The notes: generated by a model not told the origin, from the sequence alone. A stretch of 64,000 bases of DNA from Auanema rhodensis (GCA_964057225.1 OZ059899.1:8494001-8558000), one strand, 5' to 3'. Shown: positions 8,801 to 42,637, counted from the stretch's first letter. Numbers and translations are program-made.

Positions 8801-9807
8801 GAACTTGACCTTGTACTAAAATTTTAATAAACTTCGTGTTTGTAGCATAATTGTTTTACCGTCGCAAATAAATTTATTTTCCTTCGGTGTTAAATTCGGG
8901 TCTTCGGCACCCCATCCATCTGGATAACAAGGAAGTGTTACTTCAACTACAATAAGTTGTCCTGGTTCTCCTATGTAGGCATCAACCTGAAATTATGAAT
9001 TCTCACATATGCTTGGCTTAAGTTTTACAATCATTTGCTCAAAGCCTGGTCCCATTCCGTCAATCATCAGAACTACAGCTTCGTATCCCACACATGTAAT
9101 GGTTAGCATTTGGCAATCAGAAGTATTGAAATATGTGAAGAAAAAGTTTGTTGATGGATGATTAAACGCAACATTATCTCCTTTTCTGGCTTTTCCACAA
9201 TTCTTGTTAGGATCACAAGTTGCTGAAAAGTAAAAGATATAAACTTGTTCAAGCTTAAATATACGAATGTAATCTTTTCAGTGCGTACCGTCTCTCTGAA
9301 ATAAAAAAATGTATAAATTATAATTTATCTTCTACAATACCTTTCTAATCCTATGCATTTCTAATTTTTTATCTAATTTAGATGTTTCATTCCATCTATC
9401 TAAAGTTGCTGGATGTATGGGAAGTTGACTATGGTTTGTTCCGTGAAGTTTATTGAATTCAGCCGTCAGATGACGTATAGTAGCTTCTCGTCGCTGAATA
9501 TCTCAGTTATTTCACAATTTGGTTTTCCTCATTAAATATGTTACAGAAATAATGTTGTAAAAATGTAAAATTTATTAAAAAACAATGCACAGCTTTTGTT
9601 TATTGTTGAAACGAAATCTAACTTTCTTAGTTGTTTTTTGTATTTATATTTTTAATATTTCTTTCAAACAGAATAAACTTAACATACCGTTTCTGTTGGT
9701 AAAATATAAAATCTATCAGAATTAAGTACATCATTACTGTCTAGTTGGCTCAATGCCAATGTTATGAAGACTTGGAGAATCACTAAAGATCCTAGCCATA
9801 TCTTCAT
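1..9807 (-). CDS. Giant secreted mucin-like protein: signal peptide, propeptide with furin-type site, six-cysteine (C6-like) domain, ~2,900 aa Thr/Ser/Pro repeat; 3' end lies outside the window
   Basis: Manual splicing: exons 9807-9688 (MKIWLGSLVILQVFITLALS..., signal peptide), 9493-9341 (...MHRIRK), 9295-9289 (7 nt), 9222-9029 (TCDPNKNCG...SDCQMLTITCVG), 8986-8860 (...LPCYPDGW...FICD), then 8815-1 (VQGQVPTTT...). All introns are GT-AG with consistent phase. No stop seen in the repeat frame. C6 assignment is from the six-Cys pattern only. Confidence 0.9.
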
Positions 9808-22859: not shown

Positions 22860-24595
22860 TTAGCTAATGGGCATCAAATTTCGACACTTTATAAAATTCA
22901 ACAAAAAATATGCAACATGAGTGCATAACGCAATTTTGAAACTTGCAAAACTATGTGTTTCCCATTTGTTATAAATCTGATGAAAAGAGTCATCTTGATT
23001 TTCGAGGCCATCGAAAAGCATACCCAAATAAATTAGATGATAAATGGCCACCAGAATGAATATCAAGTTTAAAGCAAAAGTTAACCAATGAGACTGAAAT
23101 ATTAAGAGTATCTATACACATACGTGCAACAACTAACTGATTTTCTTTTATGTGTACATTTATCTTTACATTCCCTAGCCTGAACACATGCAGAAAACAT
23201 ATTGCTAAGTTCATGACGTAAACCTAGAAAAAAAACTATATTCTTTTTCTTTTGAAATGCTTTCTAACATGTTTCCACATATGTTAAATATCCCAGTGAT
23301 AATAGCACAATAGAAAGCTTCACATTAAATCCCTAAAAACTTATTGGACTCATATTATTTTAAAAAAAAAGCTTCACATGCAAGAGAGAACTGACGAAGA
23401 ATGTAAATCCTATAGCAATTGAGGATTTTCCTAGCTTGGAAGCTGGCTTATAGATATCTAAACGGATTATTTTTTCAATAAATTCAAGAATTAATTACTA
23501 ACAATTTTTGAGATATTTGTGCATAGGCAAATTCCAAGCTATGACAATGTCAACAACTGAACGAGGAACTTCCACCCGTAGAGGCTTCACTATCCATCCA
23601 CCTCCACCTGTGAGCCAGAAAAGTGCTAAAAGCAGGTTGTAAAAATGAAGTTAAAACATATTACCTTGAGAAAAGAAACAAATAAAGTAGTGGCTAGTTC
23701 TAAATTCAAAAGCTGTTACATAATCCTTAACCAATAAAGGAACAGAAAAAACTGAGGAGCACGACGACAGTAACACACAACAAATGCTAAATAGGATACA
23801 TAGAGCGGCACGTCCACCACTACGGAGCTCTTCCTGAAAAACATGTTCAAGACATATGAATCACTTTGAATTTACCCAAAAAGATCTACGTCTAAAAGAC
23901 TCTACAAATTCTTTGAATGTACAGAAAGGTCCAAATATAATAGAGGCGGGATTGTAAAGATAAGCAATATAAGATAAAGTCCCTGTGTATGGTAATGTAC
24001 CATTTTCGAAGTCAAATGCAAAAGAGGACAAGCGCATCACTATAGACATCAAAATTCCGCGTATTGAAGCTGTTTGAGAAGACTCATATCGAAATTCACT
24101 GAAAACAGTTAAAATTCTCAACAACAACAACAAAAGAAACTGACAGAAAAATCAACAGCAAGCAAGAAGAAAAGGTAACAATAAAACCTTTCTTGGCAAG
24201 TGGAGCGGCTACGATGTAAATAAGTGAAGTAATAGGATATAGAAGGATAATATTGAATAAGTGATCACTCTTAACAAAATCACACAAAGCATAAAGTCCG
24301 CACATAATAATGACTAAACACTTTAGAGCACCGGGAAAACCTGGAATGTAAACCCGCAAGATAATCAAAAATAATGTTGACACTTACAGGTTAACTGAAT
24401 TAAACGATGGCATAAACAGAGCAGAACTAATCGAAATAATTCAACCTGTAAGGAGCCTAAGACTCCACTAGTACATTGAACAAGTTCTTCAGTTGTATCG
24501 ACTAAGAATAAATCATCATGTTGAAGTTCAAAAAAATTGCCATGCATCCGTATCAATTCATCCTCATCGAATAAAATCTCGGAAGAAATATCCAT
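22860..24595 (-). CDS. mom-1: Porcupine Wnt O-acyltransferase (MBOAT family)
   Basis: RGILMSIVMRLSSFAFD, YLYNPASIIFGPF, VEVPRSVVDIVIAWNLPMHKYLK, FFVSSLLH (MBOAT His), HLIYLGMLFD; multi-exon. Confidence 0.92.
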
Positions 24596-25283
24596 TCCTA
24601 ATTAAGTTGAGCCATAGGTTTATTTCTAAAAATGATACAAAAACTATTATAAATAATGCTCAAAAGGATATCAAAATATAATAAGTTATAATAATACAAC
24701 AAATCTCACAGCTCTTTTTATTTTTCTTGCGTGAGTAGTTGTGCGGTGTTGTGTTGTTTGCTGGTATTTTATTATTTTGTACCGCGTTCAAATGTTGTTG
24801 AAATTCAAAGGTTTGTATGCCAATTTTTACATCCGAACTGTTATCTACATTCTTATTTCAGAAGACAATTCGTCAATCTCTTCTTATTAACTACCAACAA
24901 TAGAATGGCTTCTGTAGTCTTACTAATGAGGGAAAACAGTAGGGACAAGCCACATTAGAGATATCTAGTTACTTTATTTTCCCATTCTTATATTTGGACC
25001 CTGACCTATACGGGCTCGCTGACCTTGCATGTACTGCTCAACGAGGCAAAAGATAAAGAAAAATAGGCCCGGTACGCCCATAGCTGGTGACACAGCCAAC
25101 CTATGACCTCAACACAACCATCATCTACTGATCGTACAGCACAAATGAAATCATATTGATTGATTCCTCATCTAACCCTTATAAAGCCCTTTATCCCATG
25201 CACATATGTTTTTGTTTGTTTCAAGTATTTTTTATAGGTACTTTGATAAACGTACAAGTTAAATTCGTTATTGGGGGAAAAGG

Positions 25284-27794
25284 ATGCCGTTCTGCATGCC
25301 GATCGCCTGTAATAGGCAAGTTGACTCCCTAGATCGTAGACAGCAGAATTTAACTGAGGTATTATAGTATTGAAATAGTTAACTTTAGCAGTTTTAATAA
25401 TAGGTACCTAATAATATTGCTAAATACAGTCGCTTAGAGGAGTTGTTGTTGGCCACAAATCAAATTAAAACCATATCAAAGGTATTTTCAAGTTCGTTGT
25501 TGTTGCTTAATGTATTTTTCTCTGAAGAATTTATTTCGTTTAACGAAACTTCGATTTCTCGATTTGAGTGAAAATGATATTATGGCTATTCCACCGGAAG
25601 TTGCTAATTTGCAAAACTTAATGGAACTGCGTTTAAGAAATAACGGTGAGTTAGAAAAGACTTTCTGCTTTGAATTTTACATATGTTGATTATTCCAATA
25701 ACTTGAAACCCTTTTCTGTGATTTACCGCAATTAGAGTTTGACGTTAAGTTTGAATTTCAAATTTGATTTTCAAATTAATCTTTCACGAAAACGGTTCTT
25801 TATGTATAGTATATCGGTTTTTTATTTTACCTGATTTCAGCTATATCGGATGTACCCGAACAACTAGCTCATTGTAAATCTTTGATGGTTTTTGATTTAA
25901 GTTCAAATCCTATCACAAGGTGAATATACTTTTATAAGTCAAGAAATATTTGTTGAAAGTTTCAGACTACCTGATGCTATCTCACAATGCACTTCCTTAA
26001 CTTATCTGGGATTGAATGATGTTTCTTTGACACAACTTCCGGCTGATATTGGCAATTTAACGAATTTACGTTCTCTTGAGGTTATAATTCCTTTCTTACT
26101 GCTTTTTTGAAATAAATTTTGCAGGTCCGAGAGAATCTTATTCGAGCTATCCCTCCCTCAATTACCCATCTCACTAAACTTCAGATGCTTGATTTAGGTG
26201 AAAATGAATTTGATAATTTGGTGAGTTTACAGTTATAATGTTAGTTTGGAAGTATTTTGTTTTTTCAGCCTGTGGATATTGGTAATATGGTATCTTTAAA
26301 GGAGTTATACATTGATATGAATAATGTTGAAACGTTTCCTGATCAAATTACTCGCTGTAAAAACTTAGAACAACTTGGTAAACTGGGTTATAGAATTTAA
26401 AATTTAAAATATTTCTATTAAAGATGCTAGTGACAATAAATTAGGATGTTTACCAGAAGATTTTGGTTCGTTAGATAAATTAACGGATTTAAATTTATCT
26501 ATGAACATTCTCCAAATCTTACCAAGTTCTATTGGGAGATTGAAAAATTTAACCATTTTGAAACTAGATAAGAATACGTTAACTAGTTTATCTGAATCAA
26601 TTGGCAATTGTGAAAATTTGACTGAACTATTTTTGTCAGAAAATTTATTGACAGTAAGTATTTGAGTTATTTTGTTTAAATGTTATATTCATTAAGGAAT
26701 TACCTCATTCAATTGGCAAACTCCAACGTTTAAGTCTTATTAATGTTGATAAAAATGATCTTACTCATCTACCTCCTGAGGTAGGCTTTATTTCGTCTTA
26801 TCTTTTAGAGTATTATTCTTTCTAGATTGGAAATTGTAATTCTTTAACTATTCTTTCCGCACGCGAAAATAAATTGAACGAAGTACCAATTGAAATTGGA
26901 AAATGTTCTGAGCTAGCTATTCTGGACCTTTGCAACAACCGACTGAATCATTTACCATTTACAATCAATGTATTATTAAAGTTGCGAGCTCTTTGGCTCT
27001 CTGAAAATCAAGTTCAATCTAAACTTAAACTACAAGTTGCCAGAAATCCTCTAGACGGGAGTAAAGTACTCACCTGCTATCTTTTACCTCAACAAGGCGT
27101 TAACCTTGGTAAGCATAGTTTACGAATTTTCAAAATATTTATTTTAAAAATATTCAGATCCTGAAGTGACTCAAGAAGGTGGATTTGGCACCTGTTCAGG
27201 AGGTCCAAAAGTTCGGTTCCCTGACCAAGATACAACTATTGATGAAGATAAGGTTCGTTACTTTATGATTACCGTTTATACATAAAGTATTATTGTAGTT
27301 ACCCATTGGTCAGTTTACTCGACATGATACACCCAAGCCCAAATCCCAGAAGGATAGACTAAAACAAATGATTGAGAACCATACTTCATCCAACCGTGGT
27401 GTAGCATTAGAACAAAGCATTACACAAAATGAGTCTATCACATTGGAATCAGTAGCACCATTGCTCATAACTAACAATGAAAATGAACATATAAATGTTG
27501 AGTCCCAAAGACATTCGGTAACAAGCGTAGCTCTCGGGAATGTTTGTTCCTCTTCCGTTTCGGAATCGGTGGGTAACTTTGATTTGTTATTACTTATTAT
27601 TTCGAAATTAAATTTTCTGGAGTATACTAATTATATTTCAGGAACCTGTATCAAACGAGTCGGAAAATGCAGAAGAGCGATTTTTAGATATTTCCATTTT
27701 ATCGGAAGTCGATGTGGGATCCATTAGTAAACCAATTGAAGAAACGATGTTCAATTTTTTCGAAGACAATGTTAACCTAATAATTACTAATTAA
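25284..27794 (+). CDS. Truncated let-413/Scribble paralog: LRR + LAP-specific region, no PDZ domains, novel acidic/Ser-rich tail
   Basis: MPFCMPIACNRQVDSLDRRQQNLTE, LRR series, LRALWLSENQ, VLTCYLLPQQ, KVRFPDQD, QFTRHDTPKP, then unrelated tail ending ...FFEDNVNLIITN*. Frame intact under my exon model. Confidence 0.88.
25477..27013 (+). repeat. Near-identical ~1.54 kb direct repeat, copy 1 (matches 35241-36777)
   Basis: Constant 9,764-bp offset. Differences found by eye: 26310, 26323, 26978. Confidence 0.95.
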
Positions 27795-28348
27795 AGTAGA
27801 ATAAACAAAGCCTAATTTTCTGTTTCATTTCATCAACCTTGTATAGCATTTTCATTGTTGTGAAAACGGAGTTTAAAACACATTTGAAGAGTACATGTAT
27901 ATATATATATGTTGTACAAACTTTATTTTCTCAATAGATTTCCTTATGTACTAGATCAAGTAATTATTATAAAACATGCTCAATTTGTACTTCTTGTGAC
28001 TGGGAATTTTCAAATAACTCTAATGTTACAAAGAATAATGCAGAGAGCCATTTCCTATTTCAAATTCGATCAATTTGTTATTTCTATGCATGCAAAGTAC
28101 GTATTTCATAAGTTTTTCCTCATGAACTAGGCTTAGAAAAATCACGTGAACAAATTAAATTGCAAGTCTTTTCAAGGATAACATATTTCATATTTACTTT
28201 TAAATTACAAAAGAATATTTGTGTAGTTTTCCGCGAGTAGATTTGTGCGGTATGTCGTCAATTGTCTGATATTTTATTTCCATTAGTTTTACGCTCACCA
28301 GTTGTTATATTTCTAATTTTTAATCTATACTAAAATGATGTTATTTAG

Positions 28349-30455
28349 ATGGATAAAAATACGAAAGAATCAAGTGACGGTTCTAAGCTAATTAAAACAG
28401 AAACCCTGCTGTTACGAAATGAGCGACAAGGTCAAGTAAATTCCATACAAGCTGGTTCTTCCAGAGGTGATTTTTTAACTATATACTTAATAAAGAGCCA
28501 TGTTTTGATATTGCAGAAACTATACGAGATTCTGTTACTCAATCAGATTTACAAAATGTAATTGGAGAATTCGGCAAAGAAGTTCAGAAATTTGAAGTTT
28601 CTATTGTTTATTTAGTTATTTTACGCTAGTCACTTACAGTTTGCTAGAGCTAGCAAAATAATTGAAGATTTTCGACAAAAGAAGTTATCTTTTACATCAA
28701 CTCCTGAAGAAGTAGCTTGGGATAGATTGCTGCATTCATTGTCTGACGTATGTAACCTACGTTTTGGCATTCACCATTATTTTCTCTATAGATTGCCAAT
28801 TGTGATTGTAAGTATTATCAAATGTCCTTCTTGTACAACAGAGCGAAAACAATGTTCCGGAAAGAAGTAGTGGGATGTCGCAATCAATATGAGTCTATAG
28901 CGTTTGTTATTTATAAATGCAATTTTAATTTCAACAAACATATTTAAGGAAAGAGTTGGAAGGGGGTGCAGAAGAATTTAATAGTATTTCTACTGTTGTT
29001 AGTCATTTACTCGATTTATGTAGAACGTATGTTTTGGCTCGATTAGACATGATTACATTATATGACAAAATGACATCTTCGGGTTTGAAATGTTTGGTTC
29101 TAATTTTTACTAATCAATTTTTTATTTAGTACCAGAATCATCAATTGATTGGAGTTCAATGGAGCTTACTGCAATACAGTTGAGAGAGAATCTACGCAAA
29201 TGTCATCATCCTGATTTGGCTGGTATTTCCCATTTATTCCAAGTTTGTTTTTTTTTATTCTACGTGGTTGATTGTTGCTATATACTGTTTCATTTATTTA
29301 TATGTTGTTTTCTGCAGGAAGAAGTTGAAATTCTTCGTCTACTCTTCACTGCTCAGATCAGTATTTCTAATTGCCGAGTATATTTCATTCTATTTAATTA
29401 CTTAGCATATCGCTGCTCTTTCAGATGTTTGAGAGCCTACTCGAGTTAAAACAAGTTCGTGAAAACTTTGACTTCTGGATCAAAGAACTTGGATCTTTAA
29501 ATCCAGCTAATCTTTCGTTTTTTGCCCGGATAACAGGGTTCATTCATTCTATATTATAGTTTTAAATCTTTTAATTTTAGAAGTGAGCCTGTTCCAAGAA
29601 ATCGACTTATTCAATGGCTTATTAAATTTTATGACCTACTCATGGCTAAGTTCTCATTATATTTTACCAATGTTTTAGAAGCATATTGTGGGGCTGAAGA
29701 TTTAGAGGTGTTTCCTAGATATTTATTATTATTGCAATTCTTTCAATTTGCAGAGTATTCATTCAATTGATAATAAGTTCAATTTCATCGATTCTTTTCG
29801 GAATATTCAGTTACAAATAAAAGCTTGTAGAGTAGGAATAGTTATGGATCGAAGCAGTGATGATTCCGATTTTTATGGTTAGTAATGATTCCGTTAATTT
29901 CATGGGTTCTATCTTCAAGGATTTGGATATCTTCGTAAAGATAACAAGTTTGCCACTGACGGATATCCAATTGAACCATTGAAAGGTGTTTGTAGCCAGT
30001 ATCCTTTCATATTTCAATGTCCTAGTCCTCCCACGGGACATCAAAGGGTACTAAGTTTTACATATTATTTCAACCACAGTTCTGTTTTCAAGAGTCCCTC
30101 AGCTGAAGAAGAACATGGCTATCTAGAAAAGTTTATCAAAAAACATCTAGAATCGCGTAAAGTTCCTGAATTCAAAGGAGGTGATAGAGCAGCAGAACGA
30201 AAAGAGCTTGATACATGGAGAAGTGAGGTTCAAGGGAGAGTGAGTTCAATTGTTGGACGAATCAACAAATGAATAATATATTTTGTTCAGTTTGTTTATG
30301 GAGATCACTTAGAAGGTCAACTATTCATTGTTGCCATTTTGAATCACCCTCTTAAACCTGCGGAGCTAGCAGAATTTACTAAATTTGTATATGCTTCTCA
30401 AAATAAACTACGGGGATCAGAACTATTGACGGAGTTGAGACAAACAACGAGATAG
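28349..30455 (+). CDS. KICS2: KICSTOR subunit 2 (C12orf66/UPF0536)-like protein
   Basis: HPDLAGISHLFQEEVEILRLLFTAQISIS, LIQWLIKFYDLLMAKFSLYFTNVL and GYPIEPLKGVCSQYPFIF resemble recalled C12orf66 motifs; tttag directly precedes the ATG; ends ...LTELRQTTR*. Confidence 0.75.
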
Positions 30456-30896
30456 GTAAAGATCTCTTTTATTGTTTCTATTGTACAGACTGCGCGTAGG
30501 AGCTGTTTGAATGAATCTGCTAGTTGAAGTAGTGAGAGATTCTAAACTAGGTTATAGATAGCCAGATGAATTGAAATATCTCATCCCTAGTACTATTATG
30601 AGATTTATCCCCCCAATCATAATACAATCTGTCATGTTGTGTTTCACACCCTAAAGAACTCGGACTGTCAAATAAGCTGTTCAGGTTTCTCATTTCGAAG
30701 ACTTGATTTCATAATTCGAAAATGTGGTACATATTAATATATTTAGAATCATATTATTAGGGAAAATTTTGTTCTACTCTCTATTCTACTGAAATTCGTA
30801 CACATTGAAGGGCTACTACTGCTCTGCACGAGAAATATTTGTTCTTTTCCTTTTGTGTTGCGTCCGTTTCTTCTCTTCTCCATCATCATCTTCTTT

Positions 30897-30975
30897 TTCT
30901 TCTTCTTCTTCTTCTTCTTCTTCTTCTTCTTCTTCTTCTTCTTCTTCTTCTTCTTCTTCTTCTTCTTCTTCTTCT
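30897..30975. repeat. (TTC)n / (GAA)n microsatellite, about 25 units
   Basis: Directly visible; explains the poly-K and poly-S ORFs in the track. Confidence 0.95.
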
Positions 30976-33900
30976 TTTTCTTTTTCTTGTCTGTCTGGTA
31001 GAAGAGAATGAATAATATAAAATCATATGAGGTTGTAGTCTTGCAGGTAACATCACATTTATGGCAACAACGCAGAAAATTGTAAAAAGATGTAAAAAGT
31101 CGATTGAAATATTGGTTTCTACACATTCACTTAATATGATGACTAATAGTCTGAAATTTTCTCTATTAATTTCTTATCTCTTGCATGTATGATTCATTAG
31201 GTTTTTACATATTTGCGCTCCTACCTACTCTGAACATATTAAGTTTCCCATTCCAACTATTATTTTCTCTTCATTCCCGCTTTTCACACATGTCATAACC
31301 CATTATCAATTTTTACATCATGTTGTTATTCCTTTTTCGCCTGTAAGCTATGAATTTTTGAATTTTCCAATGTTTTTTTTTCTGTTTGTATTGAAGATAC
31401 CGTTTTTTCTTTCATTAAAAACCACTACGGAATTCTTCCAGCTAGCGCCTGGACATTAATCTTTGTTCCTTCTTTCTGTCTCAAATGCTTGCTCGGTAGC
31501 ACATCGTGCGTTGCAGCCGGATGGCCAAGTAACTGCTGTTGGTGGCAGGGTCAGCTGAGAAAAGAGCCAATGGCAAAGAGTTTAGACAAGAATAACATAG
31601 AATGAATGTGGACCGATCCCATCAGTCTATTTCTCTCGGATTTGTGACCTTAATTTTTTCTCTCCATCGCCCGATTCTAGCATCACATATAAGTACCCCT
31701 GAACGTTGGCATTTTCGAGATGTTCCTTGCCCGAATATCACAATGAAAAGAGGACAGCAACGATCACGACGACGTGTTTCTTCAAGCTGAGAGTGGCCTG
31801 ATTCTTCTCCAGTCGATTCTATTATGGTTCAACATCTATGTCCACTGCTTAAAGCCTATTGAGCGCGGCTTGCTCGTCGATGCGCAGCTAATGAAGGCAC
31901 ACATCATCTCAACTAATCTTAATTCTCCTTTATCATTGTGAAAAGAAGCTGAATTTTGTTGATTTTATCATTACTTTGTTGTAACGAAGTAGCAAAGCTT
32001 TTCTCGAAGCTCTCGTTGGTCCGATCTATGCCCTACTAAAAGCCTTTCCCTTGGGGTTTGTGTCGAGGCAGGCTTAAAATCTATCCATCCATTCAAGAAG
32101 CTTTTATTTACGGGTGGAAGCTGCACTCTTCTACTCTACGGCCATGCCTTTGCCGGTTACAATCCGTGCTGATCTCCTGGGGTCTTGACTCTAGAGATTG
32201 AATTGTCAAATCTTATATATCTCTATATTTCTAATATCAAAATTTTGAAGCCTTCCTCTGCTACATTACTTCGTTATGTATACTTGTCTTAGAATATAGT
32301 TTTATTTGTTTAGCTTGATTGGCAATTTTAACAGCTTCATACTGGGTTTTTAAAAAATATATAAATCCTATTTTTTTAGTTTAATATTGTGTTGAATCTC
32401 AGCTTTTTTTCAGACGTCACTGGCTGATTAATGAATATCAAACTTTCAGCAACAATGTGCTCTGATTATTGCTCAATTATTCTTCAGGTTTTTCATAACT
32501 CCGGGAAAGGAAACTAGGACTAGAGTTTACACCGCAATGATGAACACAGCGTTGGCGATGATAGTGGTTCTGTGCTATTGGCTAGAGTTTGAATGACATT
32601 CAAGGTGTAGGCTAAGTTAATTATAAAATCTAGGTTCTTACGTTGTTTTGTTATAGTGGGACCCTGATCGGGCCTGCTTTCTACTGACCTTGTATATGGT
32701 GAAGTGAGAGGTAGATGTTATGTTGTAGAACAGTGCGGGAACGAAGAGGACAGGGCGGAGGAGGAGGCACAGACAAACGGACCTGGTCAGCCTGCAGTCG
32801 TCACCACACTCAACCTGCGACCTCCGTCCCTCCCAAACCCCAACGCCTCTTTTCCAACCCACCTCACGACCTTGCACCACTCCTATTGATCGATCTCTTT
32901 GCCACGTACTATACTAAGCTGTGCTCCCCAAAAGGTCTTCGTTATTTGCCTTACTCACTTGCCTATCTTTTCCTAGCCTAATAATCTCTGTTCGTTTCCA
33001 TCTTTTCTTTACTAAGATTTTTGATTCCTTGATTGTTCAGTTATATTTCCTTGTTTCATTTTTTAAATATAAAACGGGTACATAACAACACGAGTTTCTG
33101 TGTTTTGTCCTGCATTTCTTCGTAGTTTTTGACTTGTCGTGTTACATGATATTCTTGGCATAGGTCAGACCTCAGGTCATTTTCATACAACATATTATAT
33201 TTCTTCCATTTTCATTTGACTTCCTGATTATGTGCTTCCGAATGTTATGTATTAGTGTGGTCTCTAATAATATGATTTTCATATTGATTAATAATAGTTA
33301 AAGAGATTTCCAAAATCATTCGCTTTTTGACTTTCGAGTGCTTTGGTTTCCACCAAATGTACTATTTCAGTGCTTTCTCATTGTTGATTTTCGTTTTTCG
33401 TCTCTCTCTCACTATGTATGAATATGCATGTATGTGCGTCTCTCTTACATATTATAGATATCGTTGCTATGTCATTATAGCAGGATTCTTTTTTTGGACT
33501 CAATCTCGTTCTCTTTTTCACATCTCCCTCTTTCTCTCTGCTTCTCTTTATCTCTTCTAGCTCTTTTAGTTTCTATTTCTATTTCTTTCTTTTTAATGGC
33601 TTTTAGGATAACCATTGATTGTTCTTTCACTAAATATCGGAAATATCTTATCTGTTATGACTATAGATTATATTCTTCTTGGCTTCATCTTCCTGTGTGT
33701 CGTCGTGCGAATAGGAAAATAGCTCATACTCTCCTTCATGTCAAATCTTCCCGCCTCACTCTCAACGTTTCTTTTTCTCTACGCCTTCCCAATTCCTCTC
33801 GCTATTTCTATGCAGGCTCCGTGTTTTTCATCTAGTGATGGTTTTGCTTTTGTCGATCAAAGTGCCGATAATCGGCCCAGAATTGCTTATTCAATGAGTC

Positions 33901-35050
33901 AGTACATATGCGCATCTTCGTAATGCTCGCCACAGTTCAAAATCGCATCATGTAGTTGTTTTTTTTACAAATCTGTTGTCCTCTATTTTTATCTTTGTTC
34001 ACAATACACAAATGGTGAATATATACCTTAAAAAGACGAATAGGAAGAAAAGATAGAGAGCTTAATGTGAAATGTATTGTCGTCTTTCTTCGTTATCCAG
34101 GTTGCTTAACTTGCGCAAATCGATCGTTCCCATAACATGCTTTTTTCAGTGATAAGATCGCAGGAAAGATAGTAGCGACCTTGCCAACGGTTGTCTACTT
34201 CTGTTAGCATTCCAACTCAAAATTATGATCAACTGTTGTGCTTTTGAATATTGTTAATATTTCGGCATATAATTTAATTTAATTATTTATGAATATCGTA
34301 GATGTATTACCGGTATGTAGTATTCTGTATGAAGCTTAACCAAATCATGCAATCTTTGAGTAAAAGAGTATACCTTTAAGTATGTCGCCTAATTCAATGT
34401 GTTCTATTTGCATTTCTTTTAATGTAGAGTAGATTGAAAAGGAGATTTCATTAATGAGCAAAAGTGTTTCGTCCCGATTTGTCTCGGATTCCCGAGCATG
34501 TTGCAATGATGCTTTAGTTCGGACTTGCTGCTTTTCACCAATTTATAAACAACTTGATCCTTTTCAACACTTTTTCTTCGTTTTAGCTAATGGTGTAATC
34601 ACGCATTGCTTTTTTCTCAGTTTTTTCAAGTTACCGCTTATTTTTATTCGTCCATATTATTGTTAGTATTATTTCGTACTATTTTCTCTTTCTTTGAGCT
34701 TATCAGCCTTTCCTATTGATTCATCATAAATCGATCGAGCATCGCCTTTTGTTTATGCTGACTGTGTCTGTTTTAAGGTTTGCTGCTAGATTGACCTATT
34801 TCAATATAAACTACTTCACTCACTATTCTTCTTTTATCTGCAGCATTCTTTTGCGAGAATGTTTTTGAATTCTTCTATTTTTCGTTTGAATTTATTTTTT
34901 CCATAATTCGTTTTTTTGCCTCTCGATCAAACTGATTTTTGACGTGCATTGTTTCCTTCATTTCTCTTTTTACTTAAAGTTTCATAAGACCTTTGTATTT
35001 TAGAAATAGCGGAACTTCGCTTTAGGCGAAGGCTTTATTAGGACACAACC

Positions 35051-38000
35051 ATGCCATTTTGCATGCCGATAACCTGCAATAGGCAAATTGATTCTCTTGA
35101 TCGTCGGCAACAAAATTTGACCGAGGTTTGAAAAAAAATTGCTCTGATTGTTATTAATCTTTTGCAGGTTCCACACGATATTGAAAGGTATAGAGCATTA
35201 GAAGAGTTGTTGTTGGCCACAAATCAAATTAAACTCATTCCAAAGGTATTTTCAAGTTCGTTGTTGTTGCTTAATGTATTTTTCTCTGAAGAATTTATTT
35301 CGTTTAACGAAACTTCGATTTCTCGATTTGAGTGAAAATGATATTATGGCTATTCCACCGGAAGTTGCTAATTTGCAAAACTTAATGGAACTGCGTTTAA
35401 GAAATAACGGTGAGTTAGAAAAGACTTTCTGCTTTGAATTTTACATATGTTGATTATTCCAATAACTTGAAACCCTTTTCTGTGATTTACCGCAATTAGA
35501 GTTTGACGTTAAGTTTGAATTTCAAATTTGATTTTCAAATTAATCTTTCACGAAAACGGTTCTTTATGTATAGTATATCGGTTTTTTATTTTACCTGATT
35601 TCAGCTATATCGGATGTACCCGAACAACTAGCTCATTGTAAATCTTTGATGGTTTTTGATTTAAGTTCAAATCCTATCACAAGGTGAATATACTTTTATA
35701 AGTCAAGAAATATTTGTTGAAAGTTTCAGACTACCTGATGCTATCTCACAATGCACTTCCTTAACTTATCTGGGATTGAATGATGTTTCTTTGACACAAC
35801 TTCCGGCTGATATTGGCAATTTAACGAATTTACGTTCTCTTGAGGTTATAATTCCTTTCTTACTGCTTTTTTGAAATAAATTTTGCAGGTCCGAGAGAAT
35901 CTTATTCGAGCTATCCCTCCCTCAATTACCCATCTCACTAAACTTCAGATGCTTGATTTAGGTGAAAATGAATTTGATAATTTGGTGAGTTTACAGTTAT
36001 AATGTTAGTTTGGAAGTATTTTGTTTTTTCAGCCTGTGGATATTGGTAATATGGTATCTTTAAAGGAGTTATATATTGATATGAATGATGTTGAAACGTT
36101 TCCTGATCAAATTACTCGCTGTAAAAACTTAGAACAACTTGGTAAACTGGGTTATAGAATTTAAAATTTAAAATATTTCTATTAAAGATGCTAGTGACAA
36201 TAAATTAGGATGTTTACCAGAAGATTTTGGTTCGTTAGATAAATTAACGGATTTAAATTTATCTATGAACATTCTCCAAATCTTACCAAGTTCTATTGGG
36301 AGATTGAAAAATTTAACCATTTTGAAACTAGATAAGAATACGTTAACTAGTTTATCTGAATCAATTGGCAATTGTGAAAATTTGACTGAACTATTTTTGT
36401 CAGAAAATTTATTGACAGTAAGTATTTGAGTTATTTTGTTTAAATGTTATATTCATTAAGGAATTACCTCATTCAATTGGCAAACTCCAACGTTTAAGTC
36501 TTATTAATGTTGATAAAAATGATCTTACTCATCTACCTCCTGAGGTAGGCTTTATTTCGTCTTATCTTTTAGAGTATTATTCTTTCTAGATTGGAAATTG
36601 TAATTCTTTAACTATTCTTTCCGCACGCGAAAATAAATTGAACGAAGTACCAATTGAAATTGGAAAATGTTCTGAGCTAGCTATTCTGGACCTTTGCAAC
36701 AACCGACTGAATCATTTACCATTTACAATCAATGTATTATTCAAGTTGCGAGCTCTTTGGCTCTCTGAAAATCAAGTCCAAGCTATGATGAAATTGCAAG
36801 TAACTAGAGATCCTCGAACGGGAAATAAAGTATTAACTTGCTATCTTCTACCTCAACAAGGTGTTAATCTTGGTATGATATGAACCGATCAATTTCTTTG
36901 TAAATGTATGATTCAGAACCTGAAAGTGATAGACGACCAATAGGAGGCAACGGCGCTTGTGTTGGTGGTCCAAAAGTTCATTTCCCCGATCAAGATACTA
37001 CAGTGGATGACGAAAAGGTTATTACTATCTTAAAAAATAGAAGCACACAAAATTTTAGCTACCTACCGGACAATTTGAACGCCATGACACTCCGAAACCT
37101 AAGTCTCATAAGGATAAACTCAAAAAAAATAGTATTGATGGGCATGTTATCCCTCACGCCGATCAACATGTAAGACTGTTCATTTAAATGTTATATTCTA
37201 GAGACATTCGTATTTCAGGCTCAGGGAACTACCTTATCGCTCCATAAAAAAGGTACTCCAGACACATCTCCTTCTGGTCCTATCCCAACTCCTCGTTCTG
37301 CTTTGAAGTTTCAAAGCGTTTCTCCTGGACAATATGAGCCTGAGGCTCTCAGACATTCTCAAAACAGTTTAGCCGCTGTAACTGGAGTTCCGCTGTCCAC
37401 TTCAGCTCCTGCTCCTTCTACTCCTGTCCGAGAGCTGGTAAGAGTAGCTTGCTTTTTCTTGTTTTCTTATATAAAAAAATAGCATATAAATATATAAATA
37501 TATACGTATTTATATAATATTTTATGGGGTTTAGGAAAAGAGCGTTGCATTCACTAAAGATGTGTTTGACAGTTCAGCTAACTGTCGTCTTAAACGGATC
37601 AACACTCCACATAAAGGTGTACGTGGAGCTTTGAATGGGGGAGAGAAAGTGGGTGTTACAAGCGGTTATCAGTTCGTCTAAAAGCATCTTATGTTAAACG
37701 CTAACCCTGCTTGGCTTGTTAAATTTAACTTATTTCTATACCTTAAGTTAAAATTACTATCTTTCATTTCTATTATAAAGTTTCCCGTCTAATTTTTCTT
37801 ATTTTTTTTTTGGTTTTTTATTTGTATTAATACACTATACATATCATCATCTTTTTTTCAGGAAAGAGCTTCACGGGCTTCAAACGCACCAGATCTTATT
37901 GTTAAAAGGATCATTATTAAAAGAGACGAAAAAGGAGGACTAGGTGTGTTTTTTAGTCAACCATTTCATTTTTTATTTATTATTATCTTGTTTGAGGTTT

Positions 38001-41000
38001 ATCAATTGCTGGTGGCTTAGGAAGTACCCCGTATAAGGATGACGATCATGGTCTTTTTGTTTCTAAGGTCGTTCCAGGGGGATCAGCAGATCATGCTGGT
38101 TTGAAAGTTGGAGACAAGTTGATTAGAGTCAATGCCACTGATGTCACGAATGTTAGCCACGATATTGCTGTCAAAGCCATGCAAATAGCCAAAGGGATTG
38201 TTGAACTAACAGTTCTGAGAAATGAAGATGCATCAATTGTTGTTCCTTCACCAGCCCCTAAGGTATTTGTGTTTTTTTTTGATTGCTTCGTAACCCTAAT
38301 AATTTCAGACTCCAGAGCATACTTTAGACATTTCATTTATGTCAGAAATTGCTGATGTTTCCTCACTTAACAAGGAAACAATTAGTGCTACGCTCCGTAG
38401 AGATGCAACTGGCTCTGTTGGTTTTTCTGTTGCTGGGGGAGTAGGATCCGGCAGAGATGGCATATTCATAAGTGCTATAACTCGAGGAGGTGTCGCTGAT
38501 CGTCATGGGAAAATTTTGGTATTTTGAAATAACACATGAACCACTTGATCGTTTATTTTCAGGTTGGAGATAGAGTTCTCACCATCAATGGTACCAAGAT
38601 GACAAATGTACGTCATGACCAAGCGGTTGCTCTTCTCACAGGATCACCTGGAGAAGACGTATATCTTGTTGTTCAAAGAGATAGGAACGTTTCTTCTCCA
38701 ACTATTCCAGTAACTCCTATTAGGACTACTTCGGGACACGCTTCAGCAAATAGTTCAATAAATCAATCTTTCTCACCTATGGTATGATATTTTTAATTTG
38801 CAGTCTTATCATTTTCTTCATTCAGCCACAGGTCCCAGCTGTTGCAAAGTCACCTACTACTTCTGTTCCTGTTAATCAATTAGGTGATACATCTTCTTGG
38901 GATGGGAAAAGTGAAGAAGTCGAACTTCGTCGTGACGGAAAGTCTCTAGGCTTGTCTATTGTCGGAGGATGTGATCATTCTAGTCATCCTTTCGGTGTGA
39001 ATGACCCAGGAGTATTTATTAGTAAAATAGCGGCTAATTCACCTGCTGATAGGTATCATGAAATTTTTTATTTTGAACACAATGTTTTTAAAGATCACTA
39101 AGACTTCGAATTGGCGATCGGATATTGGCAGTGAACAATGTTGATGTTAGTAAAGCTGAACACAAAGTTGCTGTTGAGGTGAACATAATAATAATGTTCA
39201 TATATATCAACAAGTTATTCTTCAGGCTTTACAAACTGCTGGTGTTGTTGTCAGAATTCGAGTAACTCATGATCCACAACCTAGTGGATTAAAAGAAGTT
39301 GTATTAATCCGAAACGGTGCCAATCCTCTTGGTCTATATATTCACGGAGGAGTTCGTGGCCCTGCAGCAAATCCTAATGATTCTTCTGATGAAGGGATAT
39401 TCATGGAAAGGGTTATTAATCCTATATAATGTACAGGTTCTTATTTTGTTTTTTATAGGTTGATCCTGGTTCAACCGCTGAAAAGGCAGGTTTAACAGCA
39501 GGGCATCGTATAATTGAAGTAAATGGAGAGCCTTTACTTGGATGCACACAACAAGATGCTGCTGACATCCTGAAAGGACAGCAAGAGTTACGATTACTTA
39601 TCTGCAATGGCTACAATAAACATGAGCCAAAATCAATCTCGGTGAGTAATGGAATGCGTCATCAGACTTTTATTTCATAGCATATGAGGCGATGAGATCT
39701 ACTGAATCTAGTCCGTATTATAGCTCAATTGTCTTTCTTAGGCCACATTATTTAATAATGGTGCTATAGTCATAATTCATTTTCTTTTTTTGCGGCGACT
39801 GTTGCTTTATTGTCTCAGGTTTCCGTTCTTTTTATAACGAAATCAGTTTGCGATCATTCCCATTATTAGTGTGTGTATCAACACTCAAACATGAGCCTTA
39901 TTTTAACGGTTGTTTCTTATATAGTTTGTTATCGTTGATTATCATCTCTCGAATATGTGATATGTCTATTATGTTTCCAGTGACTTTTCAAGTATGCCTA
40001 ATCTTTTGATAGATGTGTTTATGAAATAATGAATTCTTCACTTAGACAAATCGTTTGTGAACGGGATATTATGATAAGTAAAATTAACTTTACTCACCAC
40101 GTAGCACTACTAATCAGAGCACTACCACCTTCTGCTTACTGTTTGTTGTAACATATGTCCACACGCAGTTGGTAGCCTAATGTGTCTGTGATGTTGTGCT
40201 GCTTGGCTTCCGCTTTTCCCGTTCTCCGATTTTTTTTGTTAAGAGAAATTTTAAGTTGACTTAGATGCATGTGATATTGTTTCCCTATTAAAATTGTCTT
40301 ACCTCTTGAAACTTATGTATTGATTACTAACGAGTAACTTTCTGCATGACGACTTCTCATTTAGTTTCTATCTTTCTTGAAATATTATATGTTGTGAATC
40401 GAAATTTTCAACGCAAGTTGAAGGAGAAGTATTGTGCATGAAGGAGAAAGTTTTTGAAAACTGCTCAACGTTTTATCATCGCATCTATATACCCAGAAGG
40501 CTATGTATTTTTTGTTCTGCTGAATATTGTATGCTTTTACAGAATCCATCTATATATTCTTCCGGAGTCGATGAGAACGGAATATCCTCGCCTGTACGTC
40601 CGCTTTCACCATCTAATAATAATACTAACGGAACTGATGAAGTTGAAGACGAGAGGTCTCCAACCGAATCCCCTACTGTTTCTGCACCGAAAGTTCCCGT
40701 GCTCCCGGTTTGTGACCCTACTGCTTGCCTTTTAATATTTTCTCGTCTTACAGCAACTAAAGAAGGTACCTCCTCCAGTACCCCCTAAGCCAACATTACG
40801 TGTTTCTCAGGTAGCTATTTATTTATTCAGCTTTTGCTTGTTTTTCAACACGCCCAATATTTTGTTTGATTATGCTTTGAACAATAAGTATCTTTCAGAG
40901 TCAGAATATGTCTTTAAACGGAGCTGCTAACAATTCACAACCTGAAACATTGAGCTTCTCCAATAAACTCAAACGTTTTGAACAAGAAATTGAAATTAAG

Positions 41001-41051
41001 AAACTCGAATCGCTACAAAGCGCTGTATTTGATCCTCCAGGAAACTGCTGA
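35051..41051 (+). CDS. let-413: LAP-family polarity protein LET-413/Scribble: LRRs, LAP-specific region, four PDZ domains, C-terminal tail
   Basis: MPFCMPITCNRQIDSLDRRQ; LRRs; VLTCYLLPQQ; PDZ loops GLGLSIAGG (~37935), SVGFSVAGG (~38415), SLGLSIVGGCDHSSHPFG (~38942), PLGLYIHGG (~39325); tail PETLSFSNKLKRFEQE...PPGNC*. Confidence 0.95.
35241..36777 (+). repeat. Near-identical ~1.54 kb direct repeat, copy 2 (matches 25477-27013)
   Basis: Same sequence including introns; identical shadow ORFs at 26404/36168 in the ORF track. Confidence 0.95.
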
Positions 41052-41494: not shown

Positions 41495-42637
41495 ATGTTA
41501 TTCATTGCTCGCCGGTTTTGCTCAACTAGCTCTAGTTTTTTGAAAAAAGAAATATATCAGGTGCTTACAAATGCTATCGGTATATTATGCTTCCGAGTTT
41601 ATAGGGTAATAGCGTAGTTCGTTTTATATTGAACGATGAAAAAAGAAATGCTCTTTCATTGGGTATGATTGAAGAACTTCATTCTGAACTCAAGGGAATT
41701 AACAGAATCAAAAAAGTTTGTTCCATATTAAAGAGATTTCTCAATTTCTCAATTCTAGTTAAGATCTGTGATTATTGCCTCAGAAGGGCCTGCATTCTCG
41801 TCAGGACATGATCTTAAAGAATTGGTTAGTAAAATAATATGCGGGATAGCCCCACTCAGCTTGTAAACGATTGTTAATTTTAGAAACACGATCAAGGGTC
41901 TGATACACATTTAAAAATCTTTGATCAATGTGCCCAGCTAGTACAGTTCATTCAAGCCATGCAAGTTCCTGTAATCGCTGAAGTAAGCTCTTTTTGAAAT
42001 ATGTTTGCATAATTATGCATTTTGAAGGTTCGAGGTGTTGCTGCTGCTGCAGGCTGCCAATTAGTTGCGAGTTGTGATATTGTAGTAGCCGCAGATACAG
42101 CGAAGTTTTTGGTTCCAGGGTAATGAAAATAAAATAACTAATTTATTTATTCAATTTAGTCAAAAAGTAGGTCTGTTCTGTTCTACTCCAGGAATAGCTT
42201 TAACGAGAGCAGTACCTCGAAAAATCGCTCTAGATATGCTTCTTACAGGCAGGGCTCTTACCGCTCAAGGTAATTTAAATATTTTTGTGGAAGTGGAATC
42301 GCATATTACAGAAGCACAACAATGTGGTTTGGTTTCAAGAGTAGTCCCGGAAGATGATCTTCGATTTGAATCACTGCGCATCGCAGAGCAAATTGGAGAG
42401 TTCAGCAGATCAGTGACCTGTTTAGGAAAAACCTTTTTCCATATGCAAGCAGAAATGACAACATCAGAGGCATATAGGTGAATCATCCCTCTTACTTTTT
42501 ACTTTTTCATTTTAAGGTATGGATCTAAAATAATGGTTGGAAATTTGAAATTACAAGATGCTCAAGAGGGAATTACAGCCTTTGTTGAAAAAAGAAAGCC
42601 TGAATTCATTCATACCGACGAAAAGTTTAATGAGTAG
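41495..42637 (+). CDS. ECHDC3: Mitochondrial enoyl-CoA hydratase domain-containing protein 3
   Basis: MLFIARRFCSTSSS presequence; KRNALSLGM, AFSSGHDLKEL, VPVIAEV, AAAAGCQLVASCD, VGLFCSTPGIAL, DAQEGITAFVEKRKP. Confidence 0.92.

What the first reader, a model, noticed from the sequence alone, without database searches (positions are those of the whole stretch)
25477..36777. Scribble/let-413 paralogs share a 1.54 kb near-identical LRR tract, introns included, between diverged flanks
Seen: 25477-27013 and 35241-36777 match at a constant 9,764-bp offset with only three substitutions found by eye (26310 C/T silent, 26323 A/G N/D, 26978 A/C L/F). This includes a ~190-nt intron. Immediately outside, exons carry many synonymous and missense differences (VPNNIAKYSR vs VPHDIERYRA; QSKLKLQVARNP vs QAMMKLQVTRDP) and introns are barely alignable. 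Inference: an old duplication with a very recent gene-conversion tract that homogenises most of the LRR solenoid, i.e. domain-restricted concerted evolution.
Basis: partly seen in the sequence, partly recalled or inferred. Interest (0 to 1): 0.78.

Follow-up and report, generated by a model that had tools for sequence, protein, structure and literature searches.

The report
Gene conversion between Scribble gene copies
A roundworm's cell-polarity gene Scribble/let-413 and an old, shortened copy 9.8 kb upstream share a 1.5 kb stretch, introns included, that was recently copied from one gene to the other; this is a clean example of a well-known process.

Summary
Window 25477-27013 and 35241-36777 differ at three sites in 1,537 bases. 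The homologous exons on both sides are 64-80% identical with saturated silent sites, and the flanking introns are at background identity.

The two genes are not full paralogs. Gene B (35051 to about 41050) is the genome's only LAP gene, the Scribble/let-413 ortholog, with 16 LRRs, LAPSD and four PDZ-like blocks. Gene A (25284-27794) is a partial duplicate. It is homologous to B only from the ATG to about 27370. It has no PDZ, an unrelated tail and an open 13-exon frame.

The tract covers LRR2-16, with eight whole introns (513 nt, no differences). The best explanation is an old partial duplication followed by a recent non-crossover interlocus gene conversion. B was probably the donor, and this event is probably the latest of several.

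An assembly artefact cannot be excluded without reads, but it is unlikely.

The process is well documented in Caenorhabditis. This scan has already noted the same pattern at other loci of this genome (vms-1, pha-4, smc-3, cam-1, psd-1, BarH). No sister-species DNA could be reached.

Interest is low to moderate. The more interesting by-product is an independently evolved, Lano-like, PDZ-less Scribble paralog.

The parts
25477..27013 (+). Near-identical tract, upstream copy (gene A). It runs from the last 5 nt of exon 2 through introns 2-9 and exons 3-9 to the first 188 nt of exon 10, and encodes LRR1 (end) to LRR16.
   Evidence: Three differences in 1,537 nt against 35241-36777. 1,024 exonic and 513 intronic nt, with all three differences in exons. 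Permutation test.
35241..36777 (+). Near-identical tract, downstream copy (gene B), same exon-intron layout at +9,764.
25284..27794 (+). Gene A, a PDZ-less truncated Scribble paralog of about 594 codons. Exons: 25284-25358, 25404-25481, 25528-25645, 25841-25919, 25966-26080, 26125-26220, 26269-26377, 26424-26653, 26697-26780, 26826-27108, 27158-27252, 27299-27568, 27642-27791. Stop at 27792-27794, AATAAA at 27800.
   Evidence: The GT-AG model keeps one open frame. The exons align to nematode Scribble orthologs. LRR Pfam hits. No PDZ hit in the tail exons. The last splice (27568/27642) is the least certain, and no RNA data were available.
35051..41048 (+). Gene B, the full-length Scribble/let-413 ortholog. 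Exon 1 35051-35125, exon 2 35168-35245, tract exons at A+9764, exon 10 36590-36872, exon 11 36917-37017, exon 12 37059-37169, exon 13 37219-37437, then PDZ exons and a C-terminal region. The 3' end is approximate.
   Evidence: tblastn of Auanema sp. JU1783 P0195 covers 35051-41048 at 63% over 1,018 aa. C. briggsae LET-413 finds only the A and B loci in the genome.
37996..39677 (+). The four PDZ-like blocks of gene B, which are absent from gene A.
   Evidence: Pfam PDZ hits: 37996-38352 (E 1e-16), 38754-39098 (E 1e-3), 39459-39677 (E 2e-8). The second block, 38309-38781, aligns at 84-90% to the Auanema ortholog and was not run against Pfam.
25284..25476 (+). Left diverged flank of A (exon 1, intron 1, most of exon 2). 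It is homologous to B 35051-35240.
   Evidence: Exon 1 is 80% and exon 2 is 74% identical at nucleotide level; intron 1 is 41%. pS 0.725, pN 0.098. A 30-nt perfect block at 25440-25469 is followed by 4 mismatches just before the tract.
27014..27370 (+). Right diverged flank of A (rest of exon 10 = LAPSDa, intron 10, exon 11, intron 11, first 72 nt of exon 12 = LAPSDb). It is homologous to B 36778-37130.
   Evidence: Exons 64-75% identical, introns 40-44%. pS 0.55-0.96.
27371..27794 (+). Gene A's own tail (rest of exon 12, intron 12, exon 13), with no homology to B or to anything retrieved.
   Evidence: 37-44% identity to the corresponding B sequence, which is background. No Pfam family. No match among 398 LAP proteins. 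Unique in the genome.

Best explanation
A segment of the ancestral Scribble/let-413 gene, from the start codon to exon 12 (N-terminus, 16 LRRs, both LAP-specific domains), was duplicated long ago about 9.8 kb upstream of the parent. The copy (gene A) gained a new 3' end and kept an open frame under purifying selection.

Much later, a non-crossover interlocus (ectopic) gene conversion copied 1,537-1,543 bp, exons and introns alike, from one gene into the other. This erased all divergence across LRR2-16 and left both outer flanks anciently diverged. The mechanism is inferred to be repair of a break in one copy using the other as template, by synthesis-dependent strand annealing or a double Holliday junction resolved without exchange.

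The donor was most likely B. The visible tract is most likely the latest of repeated conversions that have kept the core similar enough to go on converting.

Shown: the tract, the flank divergence, the gene structures and constraint on A. Inferred: the mechanism, the direction and the recurrence.
For: Tract against flanks:
- 3 differences in 1,537 nt against 226 in 598 flank columns; the longest perfect run is 833 bp against at most 123 bp in 10,000 permutations.
- Silent sites and introns are homogenised: tract dS 0.004 and 513 intronic nt identical, while flank exons have pS 0.675 and flank introns are 40-44% identical, which is background.
- Homologous but diverged sequence lies on both sides of the tract, which is the patch pattern of conversion rather than a crossover.
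- There are only two copies, 9.76 kb apart on one contig, with an unrelated gene between them.

Constraint on A:
- Flank pN 0.158 against pS 0.675, and exon 1 is identical at 23 of 25 residues despite pS 0.89.

Direction:
- The tract protein is 86.5-87.4% identical to the Auanema ortholog. B's flanks are 89.9% identical to it and A's flanks 69.9%.
- In the tract tree B's end branch is 0 and A's is 0.0085.

Recurrence:
- Silent divergence is lower in the exons next to the tract (0.55) than in the outermost exons (0.92), Fisher p 0.0002.
- Established knowledge says conversion needs high donor-recipient identity (PMC3966223). Flank-level identity of 40-75% would not easily support a 1.5 kb event.

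Precedent:
- In C. elegans, tracts range from 12 to 2,958 bp and extend into introns in 15% of detected events (PMC3966223).
Against: - No reads were available, so the reality of both copies as assembled is not independently shown.
- No sister-species or second-strain DNA could be reached. The classical phylogenetic proof (flanks grouping by ortholog, tract by species) is therefore missing.
- The flank tree leaves the order of A, B and Auanema unresolved.
- There is no GC enrichment in the tract of the kind long-running GC-biased conversion might leave.
- The silent-site gradient rests on 137 codons, and the distal pS of 0.92 is above the random expectation. It is suggestive only.
Confidence: 0.85

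Rival explanations
1. Assembly or polishing artefact. One copy's true, diverged LRR region was overwritten with the other copy's sequence during consensus or polishing, or reads were mis-assigned between the copies.
For: No read-level evidence could be examined. Earlier notes of this scan report many similar 'identical core, old flanks' pairs in this same assembly. That could in principle reflect a systematic artefact instead of biology.
Against: - The two copies sit on one 8.5+ Mb contig of a 112-contig, 181 Mb assembly, 9.76 kb apart, with unique sequence between them. Reads of the length needed for such contiguity would span a 1.5 kb tract and its unique flanks.
- Three differences remain inside the tract, so the copies were resolved separately.
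- If the true copies were as diverged as the flanks (about 62% identical), reads would not cross-map, so polishing could not homogenise them.
- Both junctions are in frame and at the same register in both genes.
Confidence: 0.05
2. The patch arose by another replacement mechanism and not by classical non-crossover conversion. Candidates are two successive unequal crossovers, or replication template switching (FoSTeS/MMBIR-like) that replaced the core of one copy.
For: The end state, a patch of donor sequence in register between old flanks, is the same. The sequence alone cannot tell these routes apart.
Against: - The boundaries are perfectly in register, with no inserted or deleted bases, microhomology scars or rearrangement at either junction.
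- A single unequal crossover would have deleted or duplicated the 7.6 kb between the genes, and that interval is intact.
- Two independent crossovers are less parsimonious than one conversion, a process well documented for linked nematode paralogs (PMC3966223).
Confidence: 0.07
3. There was no transfer. A single duplication was followed by extreme purifying selection on the LRR region and relaxed evolution of the flanks.
For: The LRR domain is functionally the most important part of LAP proteins (PMC6400555).
Against: - Eight introns (513 nt) are 100% identical, and only one synonymous difference remains across 341 tract codons, while flank introns are at background identity and flank silent sites are saturated.
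- Selection on protein sequence cannot do this.
- The same LRR region is only 86-87% identical at protein level to the nearest ortholog.
Confidence: 0.01

Closest known systems
Interlocus (ectopic) gene conversion between linked paralogs in Caenorhabditis, as reviewed by Katju and Bergthorsson 2010 (PMC3966223), covering Semple and Wolfe's genome survey, fog-2/ftr-1, hsp-16, zim/him-8 and col-12/col-13
   Same: Linked, same-orientation paralogs. A contiguous tract of identity that includes short introns. Sharp boundaries against diverged flanks. Tract length within the reported range of 12-2,958 bp.
   Different: At 1.54 kb this tract is far above the reported mean of 117 bp and spans eight introns. 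The recipient and donor are a full gene and a truncated partial duplicate with an unrelated gene between them. The flanks are silent-site saturated, which is unusually old for a pair that still converts.
LANO/LRRC1, the vertebrate PDZ-less member of the LAP family (PMC6234904, PMC6605793)
   Same: Gene A has the same build: N-terminus with conserved cysteines, 16 LRRs, LAP-specific domains and no PDZ domain. It is a paralog of Scribble.
   Different: The origin is independent. A nests inside a clade with this worm's own Scribble and that of Auanema (100/100), so it is not an LRRC1 ortholog. Its tail has no detectable relatives. Its function is untested.
Partial and chimeric gene duplicates in C. 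elegans (Katju 2012 review, PMC3449122; found, main text not read)
   Same: A duplication that captures only the 5' part of a gene and recruits new 3' sequence.
   Different: Those surveys concern young duplicates. Here the partial duplicate is old, constrained, and still exchanging sequence with its parent.
Other half-homogenised pairs noted by this scan in the same genome (vms-1, pha-4, smc-3, cam-1, psd-1, BarH, not re-tested here)
   Same: Old diverged ends with near-identical cores in neighbouring paralogs, read as gene conversion.
   Different: Different genes. In this case the homogenised part is one protein domain of a scaffold protein, and the partner lacks all the other interaction domains.

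Membership tests
Interlocus gene conversion tract | A contiguous run of identity significantly longer than the surrounding divergence allows | tested here: met
   Longest perfect run 833 bp against at most 123 bp in 10,000 permutations. 3 differences in 1,537 nt against 226 in 598 flank columns.
Interlocus gene conversion tract | Identity extends to silent sites and introns, so it is not protein-level conservation | tested here: met
   Tract dS 0.004 and 513 intronic nt identical. Flank pS 0.675 and flank introns 40-44% identical.
Interlocus gene conversion tract | Homologous but diverged sequence on both sides of the tract (a patch, not a crossover product) | tested here: met
   The left flank (exons 1-2) and the right flank (exons 10-12) align in frame at 64-80% nucleotide identity.
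Interlocus gene conversion tract | Phylogenetic incongruence: flanks group by ortholog across species, the tract groups by species | tested here: inconclusive
   Only protein sequences of distant species were reachable. The flank tree gives (A, B, Auanema) at 100/100 with the inner order unresolved; p-AU is 0.48 for B+Auanema. No A ortholog was found.
Interlocus gene conversion tract | Both copies are real in the organism, with read support across the junctions | not testable with these tools
LAP (LRR and PDZ) protein family, Scribble type (gene B) | [quoted passage not shown] | tested here: met
   Sixteen 23-residue LxxLxLxxN units can be read in the translation. Pfam LRR_8 and LRR_4 hits. 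The exons align column by column to nematode Scribble orthologs.
LAP (LRR and PDZ) protein family, Scribble type (gene B) | Two LAP-specific domains after LRR16 | tested here: met
   The conserved blocks after LRR16 (the KVLTCYLLPQ block, the GGPKVHF block and the FERHDTP block) align with all nematode orthologs, and are present in both A and B. No profile for LAPSD exists in the libraries used.
LAP (LRR and PDZ) protein family, Scribble type (gene B) | Four PDZ domains | tested here: met
   Three Pfam PDZ hits. The remaining block aligns at 84-90% to the 4-PDZ Auanema ortholog.
LAP (LRR and PDZ) protein family, Scribble type (gene B) | Orthology to let-413/Scribble | tested here: met
   C. 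briggsae LET-413 finds only the A and B loci in the whole genome. The best database relatives of B are nematode proteins named lap1, lap4 or scribble.
LANO/LRRC1 (PDZ-less LAP) as a family for gene A | LRR + LAPSD architecture without PDZ | tested here: met
   Open 13-exon frame, no PDZ hit in the tail, stop at 27792.
LANO/LRRC1 (PDZ-less LAP) as a family for gene A | Orthology with vertebrate LRRC1 | tested here: not met
   A groups with this worm's Scribble and Auanema's Scribble at 100/100, inside the rhabditid nematodes. It is an independent, lineage-specific truncation, so it resembles Lano in build but is not a member.

The most novel reading that the evidence does not exclude
Gene A is a functional, independently evolved LRR-only Scribble, a worm 'Lano'. 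Its partner-binding solenoid is kept letter-identical to the parent's by recurrent conversion that selection tolerates or favours. The two proteins would then share or compete for the same LRR partners at the basolateral membrane, while only B carries PDZ scaffolding. That would make A a built-in modulator or dominant-negative of the polarity scaffold. Conversion would act as the mechanism that keeps a regulator matched to its target.
Probability: 0.15. Interest if true: 0.5.

Novelty: new member of a known kind. Interest (0 to 1): 0.25.

Why it matters
As evolution, this is a textbook-quality but ordinary case of interlocus gene conversion. Its value is as a clean, long, intron-spanning example, with saturated flanks, in a genome that seems to have many such cases.

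As cell biology, it shows that a rhabditid nematode carries, next to its single Scribble/let-413 gene, a constrained PDZ-less copy with the N-terminal cysteines, all 16 LRRs and both LAP-specific domains. The literature says the LRR region alone is sufficient for cortical targeting, and in C. elegans for embryonic development (PMC6400555). This is therefore a natural 'LRR-only Scribble' whose role could be tested.

It is also a caution for annotation and dating. Silent divergence measured over the whole pair would make a very old duplicate look young.

Tried and rejected
- **Fragment-level word search** with the exon that straddles the right tract boundary. The best hit was 69% identical, so there was no same-species or sister fragment.
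- **Metagenome contig scan** with the same exon. 48 loci, none above 58% identity.
- **The look-up of encoding contigs** for the Auanema ortholog's locus, to look for an A-like neighbour and obtain DNA for dS.
- **Search for A-type, PDZ-less orthologs** in the 343-1,090 aa range, using an alignment of exon references and two short nematode proteins. It returned only partial Scribbles, LET-413 and vertebrate LRRC1/SCRIB. A human SCRIB protein record (P0309) was in that list. It sat in the bulk set compared locally, and nothing was taken from it or followed up.
- **PDB sequence search** with an LRR exon. It returned only generic LRR proteins such as SHOC-2, with no LAP structure, so it was uninformative.
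- **GC-biased conversion signature**. Tract GC3 is 0.235 and tract intron GC is 0.259, no higher than elsewhere.
- **Flank-only tree and AU tests** to date the duplication against Auanema. Unresolved.
- **Conservation by selection alone.** Rejected because the introns are identical.
- **Single unequal crossover.** Rejected because both flanks and the interval between the genes are intact.
- **Joined protein models.** Searches used single exons by reference, or alignments of exon references with database proteins. Exons were joined only inside local scripts, read from the window file, for codon statistics and trees.
Full report
**1. The observation**

At a constant offset of 9,764 bp, window 25477-27013 and 35241-36777 differ at exactly three positions: 26310 C/T, 26323 A/G and 26978 A/C. 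Identity per 100 bp goes from 1.00 to background within one step at both ends.

blastn and tblastx find similarity between the two regions only over 25244-27368 against 35011-37128. A search of the whole 181 Mb, 112-contig assembly finds these two copies and no third. In a gapped alignment of the homologous span there are 226 differences in 598 flank columns against 3 in 1,537 tract columns. The longest perfect run is 833 bp; the largest in 10,000 permutations of the variable sites was 123 bp.

**2. The two genes**

The DNA is from a nematode: AT-rich, with introns mostly 43-49 nt, and with best relatives that are all nematode proteins.

I built GT-AG exon models from stop-free segments and checked them against orthologs.

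Gene B runs from 35051 to about 41050 on the + strand. It encodes an N-terminus with two cysteines, sixteen 23-residue LRRs, the two conserved blocks that follow LRR16 in all LAP proteins, and four PDZ-like blocks. Three of those blocks have Pfam hits. The fourth aligns at 84-90% to the Auanema ortholog.

B's nearest database relative is the Scribble-type protein of Auanema sp. JU1783, at 63% over 1,018 aa and 80-95% in individual exons. Other nematode orthologs are 45-56% identical. C. briggsae LET-413 finds only these two loci in the genome. B is therefore the single LAP gene of this worm, the Scribble/let-413 ortholog.

Gene A (25284-27794, + strand) is not a full paralog. Its homology to B starts at the ATG and ends about 72 nt into exon 12, near 27370. 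Beyond that point, and upstream of the ATG, identity is at background.

A keeps one open frame through 13 exons, about 594 codons, with a stop at 27792 and an AATAAA six bases later. It has no PDZ domain. Its last 116 or so codons match nothing: no Pfam family, none of 398 LAP proteins collected, and nothing else in the genome. This agrees with another first-stage note on the same stretch (s1-407253).

An unrelated multi-exon gene without a Pfam match lies between A and B.

**3. What the tract covers**

The tract begins 5 nt before the end of exon 2 and ends 188 nt into exon 10. It holds exons 3-9 and eight complete introns, one of 195 nt and seven of 43-48 nt. That is 1,024 exonic and 513 intronic bases.

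In protein terms it runs from residue 16 of LRR1 to the end of LRR16. All three differences are exonic, one silent and two replacements. With three events this distribution is not significant.

**4. Age of the flanks and constraint on A**

In the 139 homologous flank codons pS is 0.675, which is saturated, and pN is 0.158. In the tract dS is 0.004. Flank introns are 40-44% identical, the same as non-homologous DNA here at 37-38%, while tract introns are 100% identical.

The duplication is therefore old enough for introns to have been randomised. The low pN relative to pS, for example exon 1 with 23 of 25 residues identical at pS 0.89, shows that A has been under purifying selection and is not a decaying pseudogene.

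A does evolve faster than B. In a flank-only tree A's end branch is 0.38 and B's is 0.0009.

**5. Explanation**

Three features define interlocus gene conversion of a patch:
- identity that includes introns and silent sites;
- sharp, in-register boundaries;
- anciently diverged homologous sequence on both sides.

Selection alone cannot make introns identical. A young duplication cannot have saturated flanks. A single unequal crossover would have removed or duplicated the 7.6 kb between the genes.

*Direction.* The tract protein is 86.5-87.4% identical to the Auanema ortholog. B's flanks are 89.9% identical to it and A's flanks 69.9%. In the tract tree both replacement differences fall on A's branch. 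The tract therefore looks like slowly evolving B sequence, so B was probably the donor. The alternative is that both copies have long evolved together under B's constraint.

*Recurrence.* Conversion needs high identity between donor and recipient (PMC3966223). Sequences as diverged as the flanks would hardly support a 1.5 kb event, so the core was probably kept similar by earlier conversions. In line with this, silent divergence is lower in the exons next to the tract (0.55) than in the outermost exons (0.92), Fisher p 0.0002. In addition, a 30-nt perfect block sits just left of the tract, separated from it by four mismatches. The sample is small, and I treat recurrence as an inference.

*Age of the last event.* The tract divergence is 0.2%. 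With a C. elegans-like mutation rate of about 2.7e-9 per site per generation (a figure from my own knowledge, not checked here), this is of the order of a few hundred thousand generations.

**6. What could not be settled**

*Dating against speciation.* The flank tree puts A, B and Auanema's Scribble in one clade at 100/100. The duplication therefore happened within that lineage, after the split from strongylids, Diploscapter and Pristionchus. The order inside the clade is unresolved: the log-likelihood difference is 0.16 and p-AU is 0.48.

*A orthologs.* No A-type protein was found in other species. That search sees only annotated proteins in one length band, so absence is weak evidence.

*Sister-species DNA.* None could be obtained. 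Fragment and metagenome scans gave nothing closer than 69%.

*Assembly artefact.* No reads were available, so this cannot be excluded. I consider it unlikely for three reasons. The two copies lie on one large contig with unique DNA between them. Three differences survive inside the tract. And copies as diverged as the flanks would not cross-map during polishing.

*GC-biased conversion.* There is no GC enrichment in the tract.

**7. Comparison with what is known**

*The process.* Interlocus conversion between linked paralogs is well described in Caenorhabditis. Tracts range from 12 to 2,958 bp with a mean of 117 bp, and extend into the short introns in 15% of detected events (PMC3966223). This case is long and unusually clean, but it lies within that range. 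Earlier notes of this scan report the same pattern at other loci of this genome: vms-1, pha-4, smc-3, cam-1, psd-1 and BarH (not re-tested by me). The scan has thus found this kind of thing before on other DNA.

*The gene product.* LAP proteins are defined by 16 LRRs, two LAP-specific domains and zero to four PDZ domains. The LRR region is sufficient for cortical targeting. In C. elegans LET-413 it is also sufficient for embryonic development when the PDZ domain is deleted, and membrane localisation of mammalian Scribble needs N-terminal palmitoylation (PMC6400555).

Gene A keeps the N-terminal cysteines, all LRRs and both LAP-specific blocks. It is therefore built like vertebrate LANO/LRRC1, the PDZ-less Scribble paralog (PMC6234904, PMC6605793). 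It arose independently, though, and is not a member of that orthologous group.

**8. Verdict**

- the upstream gene is a truncated partial duplicate;
- the tract spans eight introns;
- 'domain-restricted concerted evolution' is plausible but rests on indirect evidence.

This is a new instance of a known process and of low to moderate interest. The PDZ-less paralog is the part most worth a bench test.

**Procedural notes.** Searches were exon by exon by reference, or by alignments of exon references with database proteins. Joining was done only inside local scripts for codon statistics and trees.

Noticed in passing
window 1-8855, minus strand: An open frame of at least 2,951 codons made almost entirely of Thr (64%), Ser (25%) and Pro (10%), in 8- and 20-residue units (24- and 60-nt periods; array 1-8774). 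It runs off the window start. It looks like a giant mucin-like PTS-repeat gene whose non-repeat N-terminus lies near 8855.
   Followed up: partly
window 28349-30452, + strand: A run of exon-like open segments of an unrelated gene lies between the two Scribble copies. None of the segments tested has a Pfam family. The partial duplicate was therefore placed beyond a neighbouring gene, or that gene arrived later.
   Followed up: partly
window 25440-25476: A 30-nt perfect match between the copies (25440-25469) sits just left of the tract and is separated from it by four mismatches in seven bases. It may be the edge of an older conversion or patchy mismatch repair.
   Followed up: partly
window 30890-30990: A long T-rich homopolymer or trinucleotide-type simple repeat in the interval between the genes.
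   Followed up: no
window 23864-24151 (minus) and 42089-42478 (plus): Neighbouring genes: a weak MBOAT acyltransferase hit upstream of A on the other strand, and an enoyl-CoA hydratase exon downstream of B.
   Followed up: no
window 35051-41048 (gene B) compared with C. elegans LET-413: This worm, like most nematodes sampled (Auanema, Pristionchus, strongylids, Ascaris, Plectus, Trichinella), has a four-PDZ Scribble-type protein as its only LAP gene. The one-PDZ LET-413 of Caenorhabditis therefore looks like a derived, shortened form.
   Followed up: partly
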